Positions 16,238 to 59,130 of a DNA stretch of 64,000 nucleotides are shown in pieces. The stretch spans positions 62,001 to 126,000 of the IMG/VR virus record IMGVR_UViG_3300027668_000008; one strand, written 5' to 3'. Below the pieces are notes generated by a model. That model had not been told where the DNA came from. It made no database searches and was given only the letters and a program-made list of their open reading frames with translations. Within the stretch, counting starts at the first letter, position 1. Every line of letters begins with the position of its first letter. Made by a program: the position numbers and the translations under genes.

Positions 16238-16531
16238 TTAACTTTTGTTTTTGGAAGTTCCAGTGTATAAACCAAACCAAGCCGCGCCAGCACCAACTAC
16301 GATTGAAACAAGACCTGATTGTTCCATACTCGGTGCATCTAAATCCATGTACCATAATACTACTTTGTATAGTAATACTATGTATACAGTCAAAAATGCT
16401 CTTGGGAATATTCTCCAACTGTCTACTGCTTTTGCTAAAAATATTAACCATTGAAAAGGGTTCTTGCTACTGTCTACTGTTTTGGTATCAACTTCAAGTT
16501 CGATGTTGATCTTTTTTGTTTGTGAATCCAT
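16238..16531 (-). CDS. two-TM membrane protein, possible holin
   Basis: Two hydrophobic helices; near lysis genes; late promoter at 16570-16575. Confidence 0.5.
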   Translation of the reverse strand: MDSQTKKINIELEVDTKTVDSSKNPFQWLIFLAKAVDSWRIFPRAFLTVYIVLLYKVVLWYMDLDAPSMEQSGLVSIVVGAGAAWFGLYTGTSKNKS

Positions 16532-16585
16532 AGATACGATCTCCTAGTGTGTTTTCTTAACTACACTGATATTTATCGTAGATGG

Positions 16586-20532: not shown

Positions 20533-21258
20533 TTGGGCAAACGTAGACGCAATAAAGAAGAATATATGTATATCTCACAAGATACCAACGATCAAAACCA
20601 ACGACATAAGAAAAATGTTACTATTATTCCTAGAAGTAGAACGCAAGAATCTTATGTAGATGCTTTACTCACGTCAAACAAGAGTATTGTATTTGCATCA
20701 GGTCCAGCAGGCACAGGTAAAACTATGATTGCTATGCTTTCGGCTATTAAACATTATAAACAAGGTACAATAGATAAGATTATTATGACACGTCCGGCGG
20801 TCGGTGTTGACGACGAGAGACATGGATTTTTGCCAGGCGATCTCAATCAAAAAATGGAACCGTGGACTCGTCCATTGTTCGATGTTTTACATGAATATTA
20901 CTCCCCTAAAGAAACAGCCAAGATGCTAGAAGAACAAATCATCGAAATATCACCCCTAGCATTCATGCGTGGTCGCACATTTAAAAATGCATATATCGTC
21001 GCTGACGAAATGCAAAATGCAACGCCAAATCAGATGAAGATGCTATTGACCCGTATAGGCGAAGGAAGTAAAATTGTAGTAACCGGAGATGTTAAGCAAG
21101 CCGATCGAAAGAACAAGGATAACGGACTTTTAAACTTTATGCAACTTGTACAAACGAGAGATTCAAATCATATCGAATGTGTACAGTTTTCGCATAGTGA
21201 CATAGAACGTCATCCAGCAGTTGCCGAAGTGTTAGAAATATATGGTGATGATGATTAA
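20533..21258 (+). CDS. phoH: PhoH-like ATPase
   Basis: GPAGTGKT, RPAV, GFLPG, FMRGRTF, DEMQN, TGD..QAD, RHP; AGGAGG SD before TTG. Confidence 0.95.
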   Translation: MGKRRRNKEEYMYISQDTNDQNQRHKKNVTIIPRSRTQESYVDALLTSNKSIVFASGPAGTGKTMIAMLSAIKHYKQGTIDKIIMTRPAVGVDDERHGFLPGDLNQKMEPWTRPLFDVLHEYYSPKETAKMLEEQIIEISPLAFMRGRTFKNAYIVADEMQNATPNQMKMLLTRIGEGSKIVVTGDVKQADRKNKDNGLLNFMQLVQTRDSNHIECVQFSHSDIERHPAVAEVLEIYGDDD

Positions 21259-21275
21259 AAAATAACTTATTAATT

Positions 21276-21305
21276 AAGGTGCAGTGTTCCGGACACTGCA
21301 ACCTT
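21276..21305. terminator. hairpin between convergent genes
   Basis: (aagg)TGCAGTGT-tccgg-ACACTGCA(acctt). Confidence 0.75.
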
Positions 21306-21306
21306 A

Positions 21307-21888
21307 TTAGGCTGTAACTGTGTTATAAATCTGTTCCCAATCTTTAACGATAGGGTAATTGTAGTCACCGTTCATATTATGACCATGCTCTACAAGTAAT
21401 GGTTTAAGTCCTGCTTTGGCGCCTGCTTCGGCGTTCTCAGGTTTGTCTTCAATCCACCACATCTTAGAATTCTTGTAAACAGACAATGCTTCGTCTTTGT
21501 CGTCTCCAGTTCCTAAACAAACTAATTTAGTAAATACTCCTTTACCAAATAACTTGTCTAAGTTCTTTTGCCTTAAACGTTGTGCATACTTGTCATTACT
21601 TAAAGAAGTAATACAATGGAATTCCCATCCTTCGTCTGCTAGTTTAGTAACGTACTGTACTGCATCACGTAGAGCAGGCAAAAACCCAATAGTTGCACTT
21701 TCATTAAATTGCTTAATTAGTGTCTTAACCTGAGTCTTTGGAATACCGTATCGTTCAGCCATATCGTATTTGAACTGATATCCTTTAGTAGTTTTAAATC
21801 CGTGATTTTCCATCCAACAATTGAATGCAAACTCCCAATTAAGAAGCACACCATCCGCATCTGTTAATATAATTTTTTTCAACTTCAT
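21307..21888 (-). CDS. HAD-family phosphatase/nucleotidase (T4 gp30.2-like)
   Basis: LTDADGVLL; WIEDK. Confidence 0.8.
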   Translation of the reverse strand: MKLKKIILTDADGVLLNWEFAFNCWMENHGFKTTKGYQFKYDMAERYGIPKTQVKTLIKQFNESATIGFLPALRDAVQYVTKLADEGWEFHCITSLSNDKYAQRLRQKNLDKLFGKGVFTKLVCLGTGDDKDEALSVYKNSKMWWIEDKPENAEAGAKAGLKPLLVEHGHNMNGDYNYPIVKDWEQIYNTVTA

Positions 21889-21946
21889 TCTTTCCTTATT
21901 AATTTAACTTACTATACAAGTATAACACATTACGCCGACTTGTCAA
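21889..21946 (-). promoter_or_regulatory. early sigma70 promoter with conserved leader
   Basis: TTGACA-N16-TATACT, then GTAAGTTAA..AAGGA. Confidence 0.8.
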
Positions 21947-22097
21947 CCTTTTTCTTTGGTCGTCCTTTCCAACGATTTATCTTTGTTATATCCTCTGTAC
22001 GTTCGCCTGCAGGGCATTGCGTAATCTTATTGCCCTTTGCTAACCATAGTTTTACTTGTTCGTTATAATTAACTATTTCTTCTTCAGTCATTGCCAT
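21930..22097 (-). CDS. 55-aa protein with SutA-like motif (not in ORF track)
   Basis: MAMTEEEIVNYNEQVKLWLAKGNKITQCPAGERTEDITKINRWKGRPKKKVDKSA; AAAGGA SD. Confidence 0.65.
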   Translation of the reverse strand: MAMTEEEIVNYNEQVKLWLAKGNKITQCPAGERTEDITKINRWKGRPKKKVDKSA

Positions 22098-22121
22098 ATA
22101 TGTATTCCTTTCAATGAGTGT

Positions 22122-22199
22122 ATAAAAAATGAACCTCCCAGAGACGGTACCACTCTGAGAGGCTCGGCGTAAGTTAAGAAGGAGATCGTACCGTAAACT
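22122..22199 (-). ncRNA. candidate pseudoknotted 3'UTR small RNA antisense to early-gene leaders
   Basis: ACGGUAC (22194-22188) is complementary to terminator loop GUACCGU (22150-22144); the intervening AUCUCCUUCUUAACUUAC is the complement of the early leader/SD. Confidence 0.6.
22123..22165 (-). terminator. intrinsic terminator
   Basis: 13-bp stem GAGCCUCUCAGAG/CUCUGGGAGGUUC (two G-U pairs on minus strand), then AUUUUUU. Confidence 0.85.
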
Positions 22200-22403
22200 T
22201 TATGAATCTAATTTAATAGTGTTAGCAGATGCAATGATCTCATATCGTCCTTTAACACCAATTTGTGCATCTAAGATAGTTTTCACTTTCTCTAGCATTG
22301 CACACGCCAGCATAAGGGCATCTTCGTGATTTGTTAGACTCATTATTGTTTCATCAATAGGCTCGCAAAGTTCCATCATGCGTTCTTGTACATTATCTGT
22401 CAT
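22200..22403 (-). CDS. hypothetical protein
   Basis: GAGGA SD; ATGA coupling. Confidence 0.65.
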   Translation of the reverse strand: MTDNVQERMMELCEPIDETIMSLTNHEDALMLACAMLEKVKTILDAQIGVKGRYEIIASANTIKLDS

Positions 22404-23131
22404 TTGCTTTCCTCTACTAATTTAACATAATTTAATTGAGTTTCGTTAATACCTTGATACCAACGACTACTCATTTGCTTTTTAACCTTTGCAGTGATAT
22501 TAACAGTTTTACCTACTGCATCTAAAAAGTCTTTTTGGCTCCAAAACGTAACTAGTTCATCATTGTCTGTTATTGCAACATAAATGAAACTACTGTAGTT
22601 AGAACTATAAACACCTGTTTGTAGTTCAATGTTTAGGTTAACCTTATGACCAGGCTTAGAAATATATTCGCTGTCTTCACAACGTTGTGTAATTCTAAGT
22701 TCTAAATTCTCTTTCTTAACATTACGGATATAAGTTTGTGGCATATATGCAACTAAACCAAAATCAAAATGTTGAAGTTCTCCTTTTTCAAAGGTCATAT
22801 AGATACTACTGTCAAAGCCGTTGATTTCTCCGGAAAGAACTCCCATTGCAAGAGATTCTAACCATTCAACTGCTTCAGATGTATTCTTTTCGTCTGCTTC
22901 GGTAATACGAAGTTTCTTTTCGTTCTTCTTTAAATGATTAATTACACCAAGTTCCATACCTTGCTCATTGCCAGTTAGGAATCGCATAATTTGTTTGTTT
23001 GCAACTGAATACTTTATAGTATCGTTTGCAGTCATAGATGATGTAGTGTGCTTATTATAAGACTTATTAAAACGTTGAGCCACAAATGCTAGTGTTAATA
23101 CTTTGGTAAATGTAAAAGTTTCTTTTTTCAT
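22400..23131 (-). CDS. hypothetical protein with C-terminal OB-fold-like domain
   Basis: GKTVNITAKVK..NETQLNYVK; early promoter TTGACA-N17-TATTAT at 23163-23191. Confidence 0.6.
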   Translation of the reverse strand: MKKETFTFTKVLTLAFVAQRFNKSYNKHTTSSMTANDTIKYSVANKQIMRFLTGNEQGMELGVINHLKKNEKKLRITEADEKNTSEAVEWLESLAMGVLSGEINGFDSSIYMTFEKGELQHFDFGLVAYMPQTYIRNVKKENLELRITQRCEDSEYISKPGHKVNLNIELQTGVYSSNYSSFIYVAITDNDELVTFWSQKDFLDAVGKTVNITAKVKKQMSSRWYQGINETQLNYVKLVEESK

Positions 23132-23195
23132 TTTGTATTCTCTCTATTTTTTAACTACGTTTATAATACAACAAATTAAAGGCTTTGTCAACCTT

Positions 23196-23318
23196 TTAAT
23201 TATAACTATATTTCTTAATTTTAGCAATATCGGTTTGTGTTAATCCGTGGTTGGTAATTAATTTCTGTTCAGCAGACTTATCGCCTAATAACATTTTCTT
23301 AATTAAAAGTTTTATCAT
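23196..23318 (-). CDS. 40-aa hypothetical protein (not in ORF track)
   Basis: MIKLLIKKMLLGDKSAEQKLITNHGLTQTDIAKIKKYSYN fills the gap. Confidence 0.45.
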   Translation of the reverse strand: MIKLLIKKMLLGDKSAEQKLITNHGLTQTDIAKIKKYSYN

Positions 23319-23321
23319 ATT

Positions 23322-23756
23322 CTAACTTCCTGTAACTAGTTGTAGTGTTCCATCTTCTTGCATTACAAGATCTTCGACAAAGTAGTGCCAATCATTTAAT
23401 GCTAACTTGGCTTGTTGAAAGCAGTTTTCAGCGGCTTTCCAAAGTTCACCTACTGTACCATCTTTAGTAACGGCAGTGAATGTTTGATAGGTAGTAGTTT
23501 GAAAATCATCAGACATATCTTTGATTACTTTGTATGTAACAATAAAAGGCTTATCGATAAATATTTTTTGATCCAATTGAAGAATACCACTATCTAAACT
23601 CCAAACGGTATCATAGTTTAATGAAGTTTTAAGATCATCATAATGTTCATGTTCTAGTTCAAATTGCGAAACATCTTCGAATTTTAAGGATTCGATATCA
23701 CCAAATTCATCATTAAACTTGTATTCTGGTGTTTTTTTAACTGTATCTGTAAACAT
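23322..23756 (-). CDS. hypothetical early protein
   Basis: AGGAG SD; own promoter. Confidence 0.7.
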   Translation of the reverse strand: MFTDTVKKTPEYKFNDEFGDIESLKFEDVSQFELEHEHYDDLKTSLNYDTVWSLDSGILQLDQKIFIDKPFIVTYKVIKDMSDDFQTTTYQTFTAVTKDGTVGELWKAAENCFQQAKLALNDWHYFVEDLVMQEDGTLQLVTGS

Positions 23757-23814
23757 TAGTATCTCCTGTTGTTTAACTTATACTTTATAATAGCACATCT
23801 ACAGTACTTGTCAA
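23757..23814 (-). promoter_or_regulatory. early sigma70 promoter with conserved leader
   Basis: TTGACA-N16-TATTAT; TATAAGTTAAACAACAGGAGAT. Confidence 0.85.
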
Positions 23815-23818
23815 CCTT

Positions 23819-24004
23819 TTATTTGCTATTATATGGAATAAATTTACGATAACTTTTGGACCATTGTTTCATAGGCTTTGAGAAGATAATCTCTTTAGTA
23901 GTGCCTTGTTTGATATAACCTACACACCAATTTACATCGTTGATGATATATGTATGATTCTGAACAGGTGAATCCCAAACTGTAACTTCTGTTAAGTACT
24001 TCAT
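23819..24004 (-). CDS. hypothetical early protein
   Basis: LTEVTVWD..NHTY..KSYRKF, a small phage protein pattern. Confidence 0.65.
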   Translation of the reverse strand: MKYLTEVTVWDSPVQNHTYIINDVNWCVGYIKQGTTKEIIFSKPMKQWSKSYRKFIPYNSK

Positions 24005-24005
24005 A

Positions 24006-24293
24006 TTAGTTCCCGTAAATTACATAAGTCTTGTTCTTCGTCAAGTTCCACTTCTCTAATACAGGAAGACCAAACTCATCTTCGTCTACGCAAACATATG
24101 CAACTGTCTTCTTTACAATAGCATAACGATAACCTGAGTCGCCGCCAATCTGTCCACTGCCTACCCATACTTTGTGTGGATAGTCTTCGCATAATGCCAT
24201 ACTATCATCATTAAGTGAGTATTCGAAATAGTTACCGTGATCCTTTTCAGTAAAACATCCTATTGGATCTTTAGTGTAAGTGTAGTATCCCAT
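24006..24293 (-). CDS. hypothetical early protein (start reassigned to ATG 24293)
   Basis: GGAG SD 6 nt before ATG. Confidence 0.65.
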   Translation of the reverse strand: MGYYTYTKDPIGCFTEKDHGNYFEYSLNDDSMALCEDYPHKVWVGSGQIGGDSGYRYAIVKKTVAYVCVDEDEFGLPVLEKWNLTKNKTYVIYGN

Positions 24294-24351
24294 GAGCAAC
24301 TCCGTTGTTTAACTTATACTACAAGTATAACACAACTAGCCATGTTGTCAA
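24294..24351 (-). promoter_or_regulatory. early sigma70 promoter with conserved leader
   Basis: TTGACA-N16-TATACT; TATAAGTTAAACAACGGAG. Confidence 0.85.
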
Positions 24352-24356
24352 CCGGT

Positions 24357-24482
24357 TTATAACTGATTGCCAATCTTTTCTTTAGTATATTCAGAGGCAG
24401 ACGTAATGTCTTTACCAACTCCTGCAACTGTTGAACAAGCACCTAACGTTAGGCAAACTAATAGTAATGTAAAGTATTTCAT
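24357..24482 (-). CDS. entericidin EcnA/B-like lipoprotein (not in ORF track)
   Basis: MKYFTLLLVCLTLGAC-STVAGVGKDITSASEYTKEKIGNQL; lipobox plus T-x-x-G-x-GKDI; AAGGAG SD. Confidence 0.8.
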   Translation of the reverse strand: MKYFTLLLVCLTLGACSTVAGVGKDITSASEYTKEKIGNQL

Positions 24483-24483
24483 T

Positions 24484-24630
24484 TTACTTCTCCTTGATAT
24501 AGTGATGGGGGTGAGCCTTTGGGCTCTGTTTAAAGATACTGTTCATATGTTTTTCTGCTTCTTGAACAGTATCAAATTCTGCGATGACGACCTCGTCTTC
24601 GACTTTGGGTGTGTAGATAACTTGCCACAT
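24484..24630 (-). CDS. 48-aa hypothetical protein (not in ORF track)
   Basis: MWQVIYTPKVEDEVVIAEFDTVQEAEKHMNSIFKQSPKAHPHHYIKEK; exactly fills the gap. Confidence 0.6.
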   Translation of the reverse strand: MWQVIYTPKVEDEVVIAEFDTVQEAEKHMNSIFKQSPKAHPHHYIKEK

Positions 24631-24632
24631 TT

Positions 24633-24956
24633 TTATTCTACCGGTGAAGATTGAATAAATGCTTTTTCAAGTTTCTCTTTTTGCAAGTCTCGTAGACGTT
24701 GCAATTTTTTAGCATTCTTAGGTGCTTGGACTTCCTTTTGAGCATAGTTTATTAACTGCTCTTCCTCTGGAGTAATGTCCTTTGCTTTCATACCAAACAG
24801 TTCACCAAAGTTACTTAAACGGTATCCCAGGTCAGACAGTGTATTAGCACGAACATCATCTTTTTCAATAAAGGATAAGTCCATTACATCTCTGCCAAAT
24901 GCTCTTACTTCCATTTCGTTGGAGGTTAAGTCGTAGATTGATTTAATCGGATTCAT
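24633..24956 (-). CDS. hypothetical protein
   Basis: ORF with purine-rich SD in an early operon. Confidence 0.6.
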   Translation of the reverse strand: MNPIKSIYDLTSNEMEVRAFGRDVMDLSFIEKDDVRANTLSDLGYRLSNFGELFGMKAKDITPEEEQLINYAQKEVQAPKNAKKLQRLRDLQKEKLEKAFIQSSPVE

Positions 24957-24989
24957 AGATTTCTCTCTTTCGGTTGTGATTGATTGTTA

Positions 24990-25487
24990 TTATTGTTTGA
25001 TTTCGGCGTAGTCTTCGTTCTTTGTCCAAGGTTGCTTAGACAACTTGTTCTCTTGAGCCCAACGAACAAAGAGACCAATCTCTTTACCATGTGCTTCAAT
25101 TTCCCAAGGATAGTCGTAGTAGTTTGATTCTTTTTCTTCAAACATTTTACCACACCATCGAATTTTATCTGAGGTAGCAAGGTCAACCATTTCGCCTTTA
25201 GCAAATTGTTTAACGTGTACCATTTCGTGTGCAATAGTTTCCAACATTCTACGCATTCGTAGTTTGCTGTCTGCTCTAATAGAGAATTCACGTGGTCTCC
25301 AGTTGTTGTCTTCCCAACAAGAATCACCATACACTTCCTCCTTTTTCATTAAGTTCGGAACAAGTTGAATTTCTATTTCTATGTTTTTTTGGAGTCGCTT
25401 GGACATTAACAAGTCTGCACAGAATTTTGCTATAGACTCGGTGTAAGTTCTCTGGGTTTTGAACCCGCCTGTTACTGTTACTTTCAT
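24990..25487 (-). CDS. zincin-like metallopeptidase domain protein
   Basis: AHEMVHVKQ (HExxH) and PWEIEA; promoter TTGACA-N16-TATATT at 25522-25549. Confidence 0.75.
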   Translation of the reverse strand: MKVTVTGGFKTQRTYTESIAKFCADLLMSKRLQKNIEIEIQLVPNLMKKEEVYGDSCWEDNNWRPREFSIRADSKLRMRRMLETIAHEMVHVKQFAKGEMVDLATSDKIRWCGKMFEEKESNYYDYPWEIEAHGKEIGLFVRWAQENKLSKQPWTKNEDYAEIKQ

Positions 25488-46543: not shown

Positions 46544-46617
46544 TGGCTGGGATACAAGGATTCGAACCTCGATTGACTGGATCAAAACCAGTTGTCCTAC
46601 CATTAGACGATATCCCA
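46544..46617 (-). tRNA. tRNA-Gln(TTG)
   Basis: TGGGATA/TATCCCA acceptor, ACTGG-TTTTGAT-CCAGT anticodon arm, GGTTCGAATCC, encoded CCA. Confidence 0.95.
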
Positions 46618-46638
46618 ACGTTTTTGTTAATTTCTGGG

Positions 46639-46724
46639 TGGTGCGAATGGAGGGACTCGAACCCACACACCTTAAAGATAACGGATTTTAAGTCCGTTGC
46701 GTCTACCTATTCCGCCACACTCGC
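46639..46724 (-). tRNA. tRNA-Leu(TAA)
   Basis: GCGAGTG/CATTCGC acceptor, ACGGA-CTTAAAA-TCCGT, long variable arm, encoded CCA. Confidence 0.95.
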
Positions 46725-46726
46725 TT

Positions 46727-46908
46727 TTACTCACCCAAATTCGCTTTTCTTTTTAAGTCGTTTACTCTATCAACTAACCAACCAATAGCAGTATGTATAT
46801 GTCCAGTATCATGTTCTCTTATACAACTCTTGGCATATTTTATTTCTTCGTTTAGTATGCGAATCTTTGTTGTTGTATCAAAGATGTTTTCTTTTTCTTT
46901 CTTCATAA
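46727..46908 (-). CDS. small hypothetical protein between tRNAs (start about MKKEKEN; coordinate approximate)
   Basis: The track ORF's 5' part overlaps tRNA-Trp; the downstream part ..HDTGHIHTAI.WL looks coding. Confidence 0.55.
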
Positions 46909-46920
46909 TTTCCCCAACGT

Positions 46921-46995
46921 TGGCATAGGTGTACGGATTCGAACCGCAAATTTTGGATTTGGAATCCAACGTGTTACCGTTAACACCACACCCAT
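46921..46995 (-). tRNA. tRNA-Trp(CCA)
   Basis: ATGGGTG/CACCTAT acceptor, TTGGA-TTCCAAA-TCCAA, GGTTCGAATCC, encoded CCA. Confidence 0.93.
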
Positions 46996-50769: not shown

Positions 50770-50846
50770 TGGCCTGCCCTAGAGGATTCGAACCTCTGAC
50801 CTAGTGCTTAGAAGGCACTTGCTCTATCCAACTGAGCTAAGGGCAG
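50770..50846 (-). tRNA. tRNA-Arg(TCT)
   Basis: CTGCCCT/AGGGCAG acceptor, AGTGC-CTTCTAA-GCACT, GGTTCGAATCC, encoded CCA. Confidence 0.96.
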
Positions 50847-54216: not shown

Positions 54217-54280
54217 ATCTTGTATCTCCTTATTTGTTTAACTTATAGTATTATTATAACATCTTACGTCTATCTGTCAA
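54217..54280 (-). promoter_or_regulatory. early sigma70 promoter with conserved leader
   Basis: TTGACA-N16-TATAAT; TATAAGTTAAACAAATAAGGAGAT. Confidence 0.88.
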
Positions 54281-54565: not shown

Positions 54566-54624
54566 TTTTTGCTCCTTTTGTTTAACTTATATTACTAGTA
54601 TAGCACCTTTGCTCTATCTGTCAA
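54566..54624 (-). promoter_or_regulatory. early sigma70 promoter with conserved leader
   Basis: TTGACA-N16-TATACT; TATAAGTTAAACAAAAGGAG. Confidence 0.88.
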
Positions 54625-56744: not shown

Positions 56745-57076
56745 TAAGCAACCTCACTTTCATTATCGATGTCTGCCATAATTTCTGCATCTGTCCAATT
56801 AGTAAGGTCAATGCTTCTAGCATAACCTTTAGAATACCTGTCCGCCATTATATAGTAATGATCGGTTTCTAGCATATACCTGTCAAACTGCTTTGGAGTG
56901 TATACATCATAACTTGCCCAATGCATTGGGTCAGTAACTAAATGACCTATCCATAGACCCTTAGTTTCTGCCATTTTCTTATCGGCATCTTTGTTCATTG
57001 CTTCAATGTGCTTAACAAGAGCAAGTTCGTTTTCTCTTAAAACGTTGTATTGTTTTGGTGTAACCATTTTATACAT
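56744..57076 (-). CDS. hypothetical early protein
   Basis: First gene after promoter cassette. Confidence 0.65.
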   Translation of the reverse strand: MYKMVTPKQYNVLRENELALVKHIEAMNKDADKKMAETKGLWIGHLVTDPMHWASYDVYTPKQFDRYMLETDHYYIMADRYSKGYARSIDLTNWTDAEIMADIDNESEVA

Positions 57077-57129
57077 CTCCTTTTGTTTAACTTATAGTAT
57101 TATAATAACACATATTGCTTATCTGTCAA
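57077..57129 (-). promoter_or_regulatory. early sigma70 promoter with conserved leader
   Basis: TTGACA-N16-TATTAT; TATAAGTTAAACAAAAGGAGAT. Confidence 0.88.
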
Positions 57130-58736: not shown

Positions 58737-59071
58737 TATTTGCTATCCCTTTCGTCAACCATTTTACGAATTATTGCCATATAGTTCTCATTAGTAGGTT
58801 CCATGCCATATTGCTTACACAATTTCTTTGCTTGTGGAGTAACAAAACCTTTAGATTCTAGTATTGTTAACGGACTTTCACCTGCTTTATATCTAGCAAA
58901 ATACTCATCAGTAGTAAAGTTTTTAATAAGAAAAGACTTAAATGCACCTGCAAATTTAACATATTTAAACCTAGCAACAAACTCATTGTTACCATAATGT
59001 TGTGTACTATCGTTGTTATACGTTAAGTACATTCCGTCATAATTAAAATTGTCTTTTACAAATGTTGTCAT
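58736..59071 (-). CDS. conserved hypothetical early protein
   Basis: FVARFKY..FKSFLIKNFT..EYF. Confidence 0.65.
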   Translation of the reverse strand: MTTFVKDNFNYDGMYLTYNNDSTQHYGNNEFVARFKYVKFAGAFKSFLIKNFTTDEYFARYKAGESPLTILESKGFVTPQAKKLCKQYGMEPTNENYMAIIRKMVDERDSK

Positions 59072-59130
59072 TTAGTATCTCCTTTTGTTTAACTTATACT
59101 TTATAATAGCACATCTAGCCTGTTTGTCAA
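59072..59130 (-). promoter_or_regulatory. early sigma70 promoter with conserved leader
   Basis: TTGACA-N16-TATTAT; TATAAGTTAAACAAAAGGAGAT. Confidence 0.88.

What the first reader, a model, noticed from the sequence alone, without database searches (positions are those of the whole stretch)
22122..22199. Pseudoknotted small RNA whose loop is antisense to the shared leader and SD of the phage's early mRNAs
Seen (minus strand): right after the stop of ORF 22200-22403 the RNA reads AGUUU-ACGGUAC-G-AUCUCCUU-C-UUAACUUAC-GCC-[GAGCCUCUCAGAG-UG-GUACCGU-CUCUGGGAGGUUC]-AUUUUUU. The bracket is a 13-bp terminator stem; its two G-U pairs fix the orientation. ACGGUAC can pair 7/7 with the terminator loop. 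This gives an H-type pseudoknot whose 22-nt loop 1 is left single-stranded. That loop is the reverse complement of the leader in front of many early genes: UAAGUUAA-ACAA-AAGGAGAU at ~59077-59096 and ~57074-57094 (8+8 bp around a 4x1 internal loop). Close variants occur at ~54224, ~54572, ~23761, ~24299 and ~21904. It is the only copy of the motif I found in inverted orientation, and it has neither promoter nor usable start codon. Inference: a 3'UTR-derived, nuclease-protected multi-target antisense RNA that occludes the 5' end and SD of a whole class of early transcripts, acting as a negative-feedback or early shut-off switch. Alternative: pairing controls read-through into the SutA-like gene 21930-22097. 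I know of no described phage system like this.
Basis: partly seen in the sequence, partly recalled or inferred. Interest (0 to 1): 0.88.

Follow-up and report, generated by a model that had tools for sequence, protein, structure and literature searches.

The report
Conserved anti-leader RNA element in phage
An uncultured marine jumbo phage and its relatives keep, unchanged, a short structured RNA at the end of one early gene that is the mirror image of the leader and ribosome-binding site shared by about twenty early genes, so it probably controls those messages by pairing, but no experiment shows this yet.

Summary
The sequence is as described. Seven distinct versions from related marine phages show a real, selected RNA element. 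The hairpin keeps pairing through compensatory changes (5 of its 9 outer pairs), and its G-U pairs fit only the minus strand. The stretch ACGGUAC-G-AUCUCCUU-(C or UG)-UUAACUUAC and the loop heptamer GUACCGU never change, although the flanking proteins are only 41-62% identical. The shared early leader is also real: 20 of 33 strict sigma-70-type promoters in the 306-kb genome are followed by TAAGTTAA and usually a strong SD. Leader genes are strongly enriched among predicted targets. More distant relatives lack both leader and element.

The pseudoknot stem is invariant, so it is neither proven nor refuted. The U-tract is missing in two versions, so the hairpin is not always a terminator. No discrete small RNA could be shown. 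"SutA-like" has no support. The element always follows a 243-aa OB-fold gene that has its own leader, so pairing within that one mRNA (icaR-like) is a serious alternative to trans action. No Rfam family matches.

Best reading: an anti-leader regulatory RNA, acting in cis, in trans or both. I rate this as a new variant of a known kind.

The parts
22188..22194 (-). ACGGUAC, the 5' strand of the proposed pseudoknot stem S1
   Evidence: Read. Invariant in 7 distinct versions. 7/7 complementary to the loop; duplex -9.0 kcal/mol.
22179..22186 (-). AUCUCCUU, the anti-Shine-Dalgarno block (complement of AAGGAGAU)
   Evidence: Invariant in 7/7 versions. AGGAG is followed by AU in 8/13 leader genes against 6/65 other genes.
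22169..22177 (-). UUAACUUAC, the complement of the 5'-terminal leader octamer (G)UAAGUUAA
   Evidence: Invariant in 7/7 versions. The spacer before it is C, or UG in L134 and L144.
22131..22165 (-). Hairpin: 13-bp stem (22165-22153 with 22143-22131) and loop UG+GUACCGU (22152-22144)
   Evidence: Folded. The 9 outer pairs are 100% paired in 7 versions, 5 of them with changes on both sides, 0/500 shuffles as good. G-U pairs are valid only on the minus strand. The loop heptamer is invariant.
22124..22130 (-). A+U6 tract, which makes the hairpin an intrinsic terminator in this phage
   Evidence: Read. A U-tract is also present in L134 and L144, shorter (U4) in L052 and L136, and absent in the L119 and L131 types.
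22400..23131 (-). 243-aa early gene whose 3' end carries the element in every relative; C-terminal OB-fold
   Evidence: Homologs are 41-57% identical. The model has a C-terminal 5-strand barrel with weak SSB-like Foldseek hits, best E 6e-3. It belongs to a large phage family of unknown function.
23151..23191 (-). Own promoter (TTGACA 23191-23186, TATTAT 23168-23163) and degenerate own leader GUAGUUAA (23158-23151) of the 243-aa gene
   Evidence: All seven versions have a promoter and leader at this position.
22200..22403 (-). 67-aa ORF inserted between the 243-aa gene and the element; found only in this lineage
   Evidence: Absent from L052, L119, L131, L136, L134 and L144. Present in TARA contigs L127 and L128.
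21930..22097 (-). 55-aa basic protein gene downstream, with no leader of its own
   Evidence: Conserved in 5 versions. Replaced by a different, promoter-bearing gene in L134 and L144. No SutA or other family hit.
59077..59096 (-). Early leader UAAGUUAA-ACAA-AAGGAGAU (predicted target, 8+8 bp)
   Evidence: Duplex -15.3 kcal/mol.
57075..57094 (-). Early leader, same sequence (predicted target)
   Evidence: Duplex -15.4 kcal/mol.
54224..54245 (-). Early leader with a 6-nt spacer (predicted target)
   Evidence: Duplex -14.0 kcal/mol.
54570..54589 (-). Early leader ending AAGGAGCA (weaker predicted target)
   Evidence: Duplex -11.7 kcal/mol.
23761..23780 (-). Early leader UAAGUUAA-ACAAC-AGGAGAU of the gene cluster upstream of the 243-aa gene
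   Evidence: Duplex -14.3 kcal/mol.
24300..24316 (-). Early leader variant (UAAGUUAA-ACAAC-GGAG)
   Evidence: Duplex -9.9 kcal/mol.
21890..21911 (-). Early leader of the HAD/NT5C-like gene just downstream (GUAAGUUAA, weak SD)
   Evidence: Duplex -10.6 kcal/mol.

Best explanation
The element is a conserved, structured RNA at the 3' end of the early transcription unit for a 243-aa OB-fold protein. It has three parts. The first is an invariant, mostly unpaired stretch with two blocks antisense to the shared early leader: one matches the 5'-terminal octamer UAAGUUAA and the other the SD AAGGAGAU. The second is a stable hairpin, which is a terminator in this phage. The third is a heptamer in the hairpin loop that can pair with the heptamer just 5' of the antisense stretch; that would give a pseudoknot (kissing-loop geometry) that frames the antisense stretch.

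The most likely mechanism is RNA-RNA pairing with leaders that covers the SD and the 5' end. This would lower translation, and possibly change decay, of leader-bearing early mRNAs. It would act first on the element's own mRNA in cis and probably on the other roughly 20 early mRNAs in trans, giving negative feedback or early shut-off.

Shown here: the hairpin, the invariance, the complementarity, the existence of the leader class and the co-occurrence of leader and element. Inferred: the transcription start inside or next to TAAGTTAA, the pseudoknot, the pairing in vivo, the direction of the effect, and whether a processed small RNA exists.
For: The hairpin covaries: 5 of its 9 outer pairs change on both sides, all cells are paired, and 0/500 shuffles do as well. 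The 26-31 nt antisense stretch is identical in six versions and differs only in its spacer in L134 and L144. Meanwhile the neighbouring proteins are 41-62% identical. In L136 the element is the longest exact match to the window in the whole 4.2-kb locus.

All variation falls in the linkers (spacer C/UG; 3' linker GCC/AC/A/GCCC). None falls in the 24 positions proposed to pair.

The leader class is real: 20 of 33 strict promoters carry it. Among 440 translation-initiation regions, leader genes take 12 of the top 21 places (Mann-Whitney p = 1.4e-8). Ten of 17 leader regions reach -13 kcal/mol or better, against a mean of 0.35 and a maximum of 7 for 200 shuffled seeds. In leader genes the SD extends to AGGAGAU, beyond what 16S pairing needs: 8/13 against 6/65 (p = 1e-4).

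The four more distant homolog contexts (L145, L147, L148, L150) have neither element nor TAAGTTAA leader, while every element-bearing locus has leaders.

For trans action: own leaders drift (AAAA, GAAG, AAAG, UUAA after UUAA) while the element stays frozen, as expected under a multi-target constraint.

For cis action: an own promoter and leader sit directly upstream in 7/7 versions. The own leader is the best local partner in 5/7. The UG spacer of L134 and L144 makes 13 contiguous complementary bases with their own leader.

The 121-nt region occurs in contigs of marine metatranscriptome runs.
Against: There is no direct evidence of pairing, of a discrete RNA or of any effect. The four RNA runs that were laid have no contig over 21976-22242, and DNA carry-over in RNA libraries cannot be excluded.

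Stem S1 and both antisense blocks are invariant, so nothing covaries between the element and the leaders except one spacer change between two clades. That pattern also fits recognition by a protein.

Individual leader duplexes (-14 to -17 kcal/mol, with a 4x1 internal loop) do not stand out against all genome windows.

One RNA copy from one early promoter would have to titrate about 20 equally strong transcripts. That needs accumulation, which is unproven.

In the window phage the own leader is a poor match (-7.4 kcal/mol). The predicted 5'-3' pairing of the full-length mRNA is not above shuffles there: 14 bp against a mean of 9.

Co-occurrence of leader and element needs only one evolutionary event.
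Confidence: 0.45

Rival explanations
1. Cis-only 5'-3' UTR pairing. The element pairs only with the leader of its own roughly 0.8-1.0 kb mRNA, as in icaR of S. aureus. This would auto-limit translation of the 243-aa OB-fold protein or set the lifetime of that mRNA. Complementarity to other early leaders would then be a by-product of their common sequence.
For: An own promoter and leader lie directly upstream in 7/7 versions. The own leader is the best local duplex partner in 5/7. L134 and L144 have 13 contiguous complementary bases with their own leader. Full-length folds place 13-18 leader:element pairs in the MFE in 7/7, clearly above shuffles in L131 and L134. The icaR and hbs precedents are PMC3868564 and PMC5737220.
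Against: Own leaders diverge (UAGUUAA instead of UAAGUUAA; weak SD in the window) while the element does not follow them. In the window the own-leader duplex is only -7.4 kcal/mol, and the fold signal is no better than shuffles. A purely two-partner interaction should be free to co-evolve rather than stay frozen at 100% identity.
Confidence: 0.2
2. Protein-binding RNA. The invariant stretch and the invariant loop would be the recognition site of a phage or host protein, for example the OB-fold product of the upstream gene or the basic 55-aa protein (operator, decoy or processing site). Under this reading the resemblance to an inverted leader reflects origin, not function.
For: Invariance without covariation is typical of protein sites. 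The upstream gene product has an SSB-like OB fold. T4 gp32, an OB-fold single-strand-binding protein, autoregulates through an mRNA pseudoknot (textbook knowledge, not tested here).
Against: This does not explain why both blocks are antisense to the two functional parts of the leader, in the correct antiparallel order. It also does not explain why leader-gene SDs are extended to match, or why element and leader co-occur. The Foldseek matches are weak: none reaches E <= 0.001.
Confidence: 0.12
3. An ordinary terminator or mRNA-stabilising 3' hairpin next to a fossil inverted copy of a leader, with no regulatory pairing.
For: This phage has a strong hairpin plus U6. 3' hairpins protect mRNA in general (general knowledge, not tested here).
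Against: A fossil would decay. Instead 26-31 nt and the loop are identical across lineages with 41-57% protein identity, while the stem sequence turns over. The U-tract is missing in two versions.
Confidence: 0.05
4. The element controls read-through or translation of the downstream 55-aa gene.
For: The hairpin lies 8-18 nt before the SD of the 55-aa gene in five versions. That gene has no promoter of its own.
Against: In L134 and L144 the downstream gene is unrelated and has its own promoter and leader, yet the element is kept. The anti-SD block matches the GAAAGGAA SD of the 55-aa gene in only 5 bases (read).
Confidence: 0.05
5. A double-stranded DNA site, for example an operator-like site for a protein that recognises TAAGTTAA at early promoters and acts here as a roadblock.
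For: TAAGTTAA sits at the start point of 20 promoters and could be a DNA signal.
Against: The adjacent hairpin covaries and has G-U pairs valid on one strand only, which indicates RNA. A DNA site does not need the anti-SD block or the loop heptamer. The spacing between the two blocks differs from that in leaders.
Confidence: 0.04

Closest known systems
icaR mRNA 5'-3' UTR interaction of Staphylococcus aureus (PMC3868564); also the hbs 5'/3'-UTR interaction of B. subtilis (PMC5737220)
   Same: A pyrimidine-rich anti-SD motif in the 3' UTR is complementary to the SD region of the same mRNA. In icaR this pairing controls translation.
   Different: Here the 3' element also matches the 5'-terminal octamer. 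It is framed by a possible pseudoknot. The same leader is carried by about 20 other transcripts, so trans action is possible. There is no sequence relationship, and nothing has been tested experimentally.
c4 antisense RNA of phages P1/P7 (Rfam C4, RF01695) and sar RNA of P22 (from my own knowledge)
   Same: Small phage antisense RNAs whose exposed short segments pair with an mRNA region that includes the ribosome-binding site. c4 is cut out of the same transcript as its target.
   Different: c4 and sar each control one gene (ant). Here a whole promoter class shares the target. No Rfam family matches the region even at E <= 10. A discrete processed RNA has not been shown.
3'UTR-derived, terminator-sharing sRNAs of enterobacteria such as CpxQ and SroC (from my own knowledge)
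   Same: A conserved single-stranded seed lies immediately upstream of the mRNA's terminator hairpin.
   Different: The U-tail is absent in two versions. Dependence on Hfq and RNase E is unknown. The target set is the phage's own early regulon.
T4 RegB endoribonuclease (review PMC3014915, listed)
   Same: The proposed functional outcome is the same: early mRNAs are switched off as a class through their SD sequence (GGAG).
   Different: RegB is a protein nuclease. Here the proposed effector is an antisense RNA.
Lambda sib retroregulation and the T4 gene 32 mRNA pseudoknot (from my own knowledge)
   Same: Both are phage cis-RNA structures that control a neighbouring gene: a 3' hairpin for sib, and an mRNA pseudoknot for the OB-fold protein gp32.
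   Different: sib works through RNase III cutting of a read-through hairpin. The gp32 pseudoknot is 5' and is bound by the protein. Neither is antisense to a leader.

Membership tests
Any Rfam 15 family | Score at or above the family's gathering threshold | tested here: not met
   Only four tRNAs in the window reach threshold. In 22050-22300 at E <= 10 there are only chance-level hits of 12-18 bits.
Intrinsic (rho-independent) terminator | G+C-rich stem-loop | tested here: met
   13-bp stem, -23 to -25 kcal/mol, conserved by covariation.
Intrinsic (rho-independent) terminator | U-tract directly after the stem | tested here: inconclusive
   U6 in the window and L144, U5 in L134, U4 in L052 and L136, none in the L119 and L131 types. 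The feature is met in this phage but not across the clade.
H-type pseudoknot | A second stem between a hairpin loop and a flanking strand | tested here: met
   ACGGUAC and GUACCGU are complementary 7/7 in all seven versions; duplex -9.0 kcal/mol.
H-type pseudoknot | Evidence that the second stem forms (covariation or probing) | tested here: inconclusive
   All 7 pairs never vary. Steric feasibility is my inference: a 2-nt linker across the deep groove of a 7-bp helix, as in kissing loops. No probing data exist.
Trans-acting antisense sRNA | Complementarity to the target's translation-initiation region above background | tested here: met
   Leader genes take 12 of the top 21 of 440 initiation regions. 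Shuffled seeds reach at most 7 leader hits against 10 observed. The feature is not met against all genome windows.
Trans-acting antisense sRNA | A discrete, accumulating small RNA species | tested here: inconclusive
   Only assembled metatranscriptome contigs were available. None covers the element in runs X1-X4. Runs X6 and X9 hold the whole 121 nt. No ends or strand could be read.
5'-3' UTR interaction of one mRNA (icaR type) | A 3' UTR segment complementary to the SD region of the same transcript | tested here: met
   An own leader lies directly upstream in 7/7. Duplex -11 to -18 kcal/mol in the six relatives, only -7.4 in the window.
5'-3' UTR interaction of one mRNA (icaR type) | The pairing shown to affect translation or RNase III cleavage | not testable with these tools
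   This needs reporters or RNA analysis in cells.
Programmed read-through or frameshift stimulator | An open, conserved reading frame through the structure | tested here: not met
   In the window the stretch from the stop to the 55-aa ATG is open and in frame. In relatives the frame relative to the element differs and stop codons occur in it (my reading of the sequences).

The most novel reading that the evidence does not exclude
A single structured RNA, released from or carried on the 3' end of one early mRNA, pairs with the common 5' leader and SD of the phage's whole sigma-70-dependent early gene class and switches that class off. This would be an RNA-based equivalent of T4 RegB, and the first regulon-wide antisense shut-off switch described in a virulent phage.
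Probability: 0.3. Interest if true: 0.85.

Novelty: new variant of a known kind. Interest (0 to 1): 0.62.

Why it matters
If the pairing is real, it would show that a large virulent phage can time or limit its early programme with one antisense RNA aimed at a leader shared by about twenty transcripts. That job is otherwise known only from proteins, such as RegB and transcription shut-off factors. It would also give a compact, portable leader/anti-leader pair for synthetic control of many genes at once. And it would add a new structured RNA family, absent from Rfam, found so far only in uncultured marine jumbo phages. Even the cis-only version would be a clear phage example of 5'-3' UTR communication in a bacterial-type mRNA.

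Tried and rejected
1. DNA and protein searches of GenBank phages with the locus found nothing. The ClpA-like gene is only about 40% identical to jumbo-phage homologs, so there is no cultured relative.

2. The loose pattern of the two blocks with a 0-5 nt gap hits more than 116 unrelated viral contigs. Matches in bacterial and archaeal genomes and in six further viral contigs score only 13-19 bits with the model, against 83-96 bits for true copies. They are chance matches.

3. Metatranscriptome contigs were laid on 20800-25200. Cover is fragmentary at 2-7x and none lies on the element, so they say nothing about a small RNA.

4. Read-through or frameshifting was rejected because of inconsistent frames and stop codons in relatives.

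5. A plus-strand gene start was rejected. There is no promoter, and the 4-codon ORF is not conserved.

6. Full-length mRNA folding predicts 5'-3' pairing in 7/7 versions. Shuffling shows that pyrimidine/purine composition alone gives much of this in the window and in L052.

7. A possible extra 5-bp helix (RRGUU with AACUU) is 94% paired but shows only one-sided changes, so it remains undecided.

8. Function of the 243-aa protein: the only finding is a weak SSB-like OB fold. No family hits in Pfam, NCBIfam or PHROGs name a function.

Full report
CONTEXT. The window is bases 62001-126000 of a 306,714-base IMG/VR record (36% G+C, estimated 87% complete) from a marine metagenome. It is a jumbo phage without cultured close relatives: DNA and protein searches of GenBank phages with the locus find nothing, and its ClpA-like gene is about 40% identical to homologs in various jumbo phages. 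Genes here run mainly on the minus strand.

In order: ACGGUAC (22194-22188), G, AUCUCCUU (22186-22179), C, UUAACUUAC (22177-22169), GCC, a 13-bp stem (22165-22153 with 22143-22131, two G-U pairs), the loop UG+GUACCGU (22152-22144), then A+U6 (22130-22124). RNAfold gives the hairpin -25.5 kcal/mol, z = -3.1. The consensus terminator scan missed it only because its loop limit is 8 nt. The loop heptamer is the exact complement of ACGGUAC.

THE LEADER IS REAL. Minus-strand promoters of the form TTGACA-N13-TGnTAnnnT are followed after 6-8 nt by TAAGTTAA, and usually by a strong SD that is often AAGGAGAT. In the whole genome, 20 of 33 strict promoters carry this leader. The distance from the -10 hexamer implies that transcripts start at or next to UAAGUUAA; this is inferred, not measured. 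The spacing between the octamer and the SD varies, so these are two separate signals.

THE INVERTED COPY IS UNIQUE. A covariance model of the element finds one copy in the genome. The other plus-strand TAAGTTAA sites have no SD complement beside them.

RELATIVES. Pattern and protein searches recovered the same locus from other marine samples. Besides near-identical copies (L002/L120, L127, L128), there are six further distinct versions: L052; L119 (also L130 and L140); L121 (= L131); L136-L139; L134/L135; and L144. The flanking 243-aa protein is 41-57% identical to the window's, and the 55-aa protein 53-62%.

CONSERVATION PATTERN. ACGGUAC-G-AUCUCCUU-C-UUAACUUAC is identical in all versions, except that the spacer C is UG in L134 and L144. 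The linker to the stem varies (GCC, AC, A, GCCC). The stem sequence turns over but stays paired. On a model-based alignment the 9 outer pairs are 100% paired, and 5 of them have changes on both sides; no shuffle of 500 does as well, and slid controls collapse. G-U pairs occur at conserved positions, so the structure exists only on the minus-strand transcript. The loop keeps GUACCGU in every version. In L136 the element is the longest exact match to the window in the whole locus. This is a selected RNA element, not a chance terminator.

WHAT THE COMPARISON DOES NOT SHOW. The seven pairs of the proposed pseudoknot stem never vary. That is neutral evidence. The complementarity itself is unlikely by chance (about 0.002, my arithmetic) and is a tidy explanation for an invariant loop on a variable stem. 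The topology is sterically possible if the loop helix stacks on the stem as in kissing loops, with the 2-nt linker crossing the deep groove (my inference). The U-tract is absent in the L119 and L131 types, so the hairpin is not a terminator everywhere. A possible weak 5-bp helix between the bases before ACGGUAC and AACUU remains undecided.

GENOMIC ASSOCIATION. The element always follows the 243-aa gene within 0-9 nt of its stop codon. In the window lineage alone, a 67-aa ORF is inserted in between, and its stop lies 5 nt before the element. In L134 and L144 the downstream gene is unrelated to the 55-aa gene and has its own promoter and leader. The element therefore belongs to the upstream unit and is not a leader of the 55-aa gene. 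Every version has a promoter and leader directly in front of the 243-aa gene. In the window these are TTGACA 23191-23186, TATTAT 23168-23163 and GUAGUUAA 23158-23151.

THE 243-AA PROTEIN. It belongs to a large phage family of unknown function: 1069 representatives at E <= 0.001. Its model has a C-terminal five-strand barrel with weak SSB-like matches, best E 6e-3. 'SutA-like' for the 55-aa protein has no support.

TARGETS. I tested the conserved 19-nt seed against 440 predicted translation-initiation regions. Leader genes take 12 of the top 21 places (p = 1.4e-8). Ten of 17 leader regions reach -13 kcal/mol or better, while 200 shuffled seeds give a mean of 0.35 and at most 7. In a scan of every window of both strands, however, leaders (about -17 kcal/mol) are not the top hits, so the signal is a class effect at initiation regions. 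In leader genes AGGAG is followed by AU in 8 of 13 cases, against 6 of 65 elsewhere (p = 1e-4). That extends the match to the element beyond what pairing with 16S rRNA needs. Either selection for pairing or common descent of promoter cassettes could explain this.

CO-OCCURRENCE. Four more distant homolog contexts (L145, L147, L148, L150) have no intergenic gap after the gene, no element, and no TAAGTTAA leader behind their similar promoters. All element-bearing loci have leaders. This agrees with a functional link, but it needs only one evolutionary event.

CIS OR TRANS. The own leader is the best local partner in 5 of 7 versions. In L134 and L144 the UG spacer creates 13 contiguous complementary bases with their own leader GUAAGUUAACAAA. 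Folding the whole mRNA puts 13-18 leader:element pairs into the MFE in all seven. Shuffling the element shows that composition alone gives a mean of 9 pairs in the window and 6.6 in L052, but only about 2 in L131 and L134. On the other side, own leaders in the window clade have drifted (UAGUUAA; AAAA, GAAG, AAAG or UUAA after it; a weak SD in the window, duplex -7.4 kcal/mol), while the element stayed frozen and still matches the consensus of the other early leaders 8+8. That is what a multi-target constraint predicts. I therefore rate pairing with leaders as the best explanation. Cis action on the element's own mRNA is likely, trans action on the class is probable, and neither is proven.

TRANSCRIPTION DATA. 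Marine metatranscriptome runs hold parts of the locus. Contigs of the four best runs are fragmentary (2-7x) and none covers 21976-22242. Contigs carry no strand or end information, and DNA carry-over is possible. So there is no evidence for or against a discrete small RNA.

KNOWN SYSTEMS. No Rfam family matches. In mechanism the nearest are three: the icaR and hbs 5'-3' UTR interactions; the phage antisense RNAs c4 (P1/P7) and sar (P22); and terminator-sharing 3'UTR-derived sRNAs. T4 RegB is the functional analogue for class-wide inactivation of early mRNAs through the SD. The element is not a member of any of these families. It would be a new variant of the base-pairing regulatory RNA theme, unusual in aiming at a leader shared by a whole promoter class.

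VERDICT. I rate interest at 0.62.

Noticed in passing
window 21919-21946 (minus strand), overlapping the end of ORF 21930-22097: The -35 TTGACA of the next early promoter lies inside the last codons (K-V-D-K) of the 55-aa gene. The peptide end KKVDK and the promoter are both conserved in relatives, so one stretch serves as coding sequence and promoter.
   Followed up: partly
G000:C1:130170-130230, minus strand (just beyond the window's right end): A strict early-type promoter is followed at the start point by TTAACTTAC, which is the anti-leader orientation. About 45 nt further on lies ATAAGTTAT before a gene start. The two could pair within that 5' UTR.
   Followed up: partly
window 16531-16570 (minus strand), initiation region of the 97-aa ORF 16238-16531: This is the best predicted partner of the element among all initiation regions (-20.4 kcal/mol). 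It contains GUAGUUAAGAA and AGGAGAUCGUA; the latter matches the element across the anti-SD block and into ACGGUAC. No clear promoter lies upstream.
   Followed up: partly
window 22200-22403 (minus strand): The 67-aa ORF is present only in the window lineage and in TARA contigs L127 and L128. It is inserted exactly between the 243-aa gene and the element, and its start overlaps the lengthened end of the 243-aa gene (ATGA).
   Followed up: partly
window 22166-22190 (plus strand): The plus-strand reading TTAAGAAGGAGAT is, as far as I recall, identical to the core of the T7 gene 10 / pET ribosome-binding site. On the minus strand, GAUC-UCUCCUU loosely resembles the 3' end of 16S rRNA (GAUCACCUCCUUA). 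Both comparisons come from memory and were not tested.
   Followed up: no
window 46547-46995 and 50773-50846 (minus strand): Four tRNA genes were found by the Rfam scan.
   Followed up: no
window 24357-24482 (minus strand): A 41-aa ORF has a lipoprotein-type signal (LGAC) and resembles small entericidin-like lipoproteins by eye. It is conserved in relatives directly upstream of the promoter of the 243-aa gene.
   Followed up: no
window 23756-23824 and 59060-59130: Metatranscriptome contigs that lie on promoter/leader region 23756-23824 with 6 mismatches continue into the gene behind the promoter at 59130. The promoter-leader cassettes are therefore close paralogs that can mislead read mapping.
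   Followed up: no
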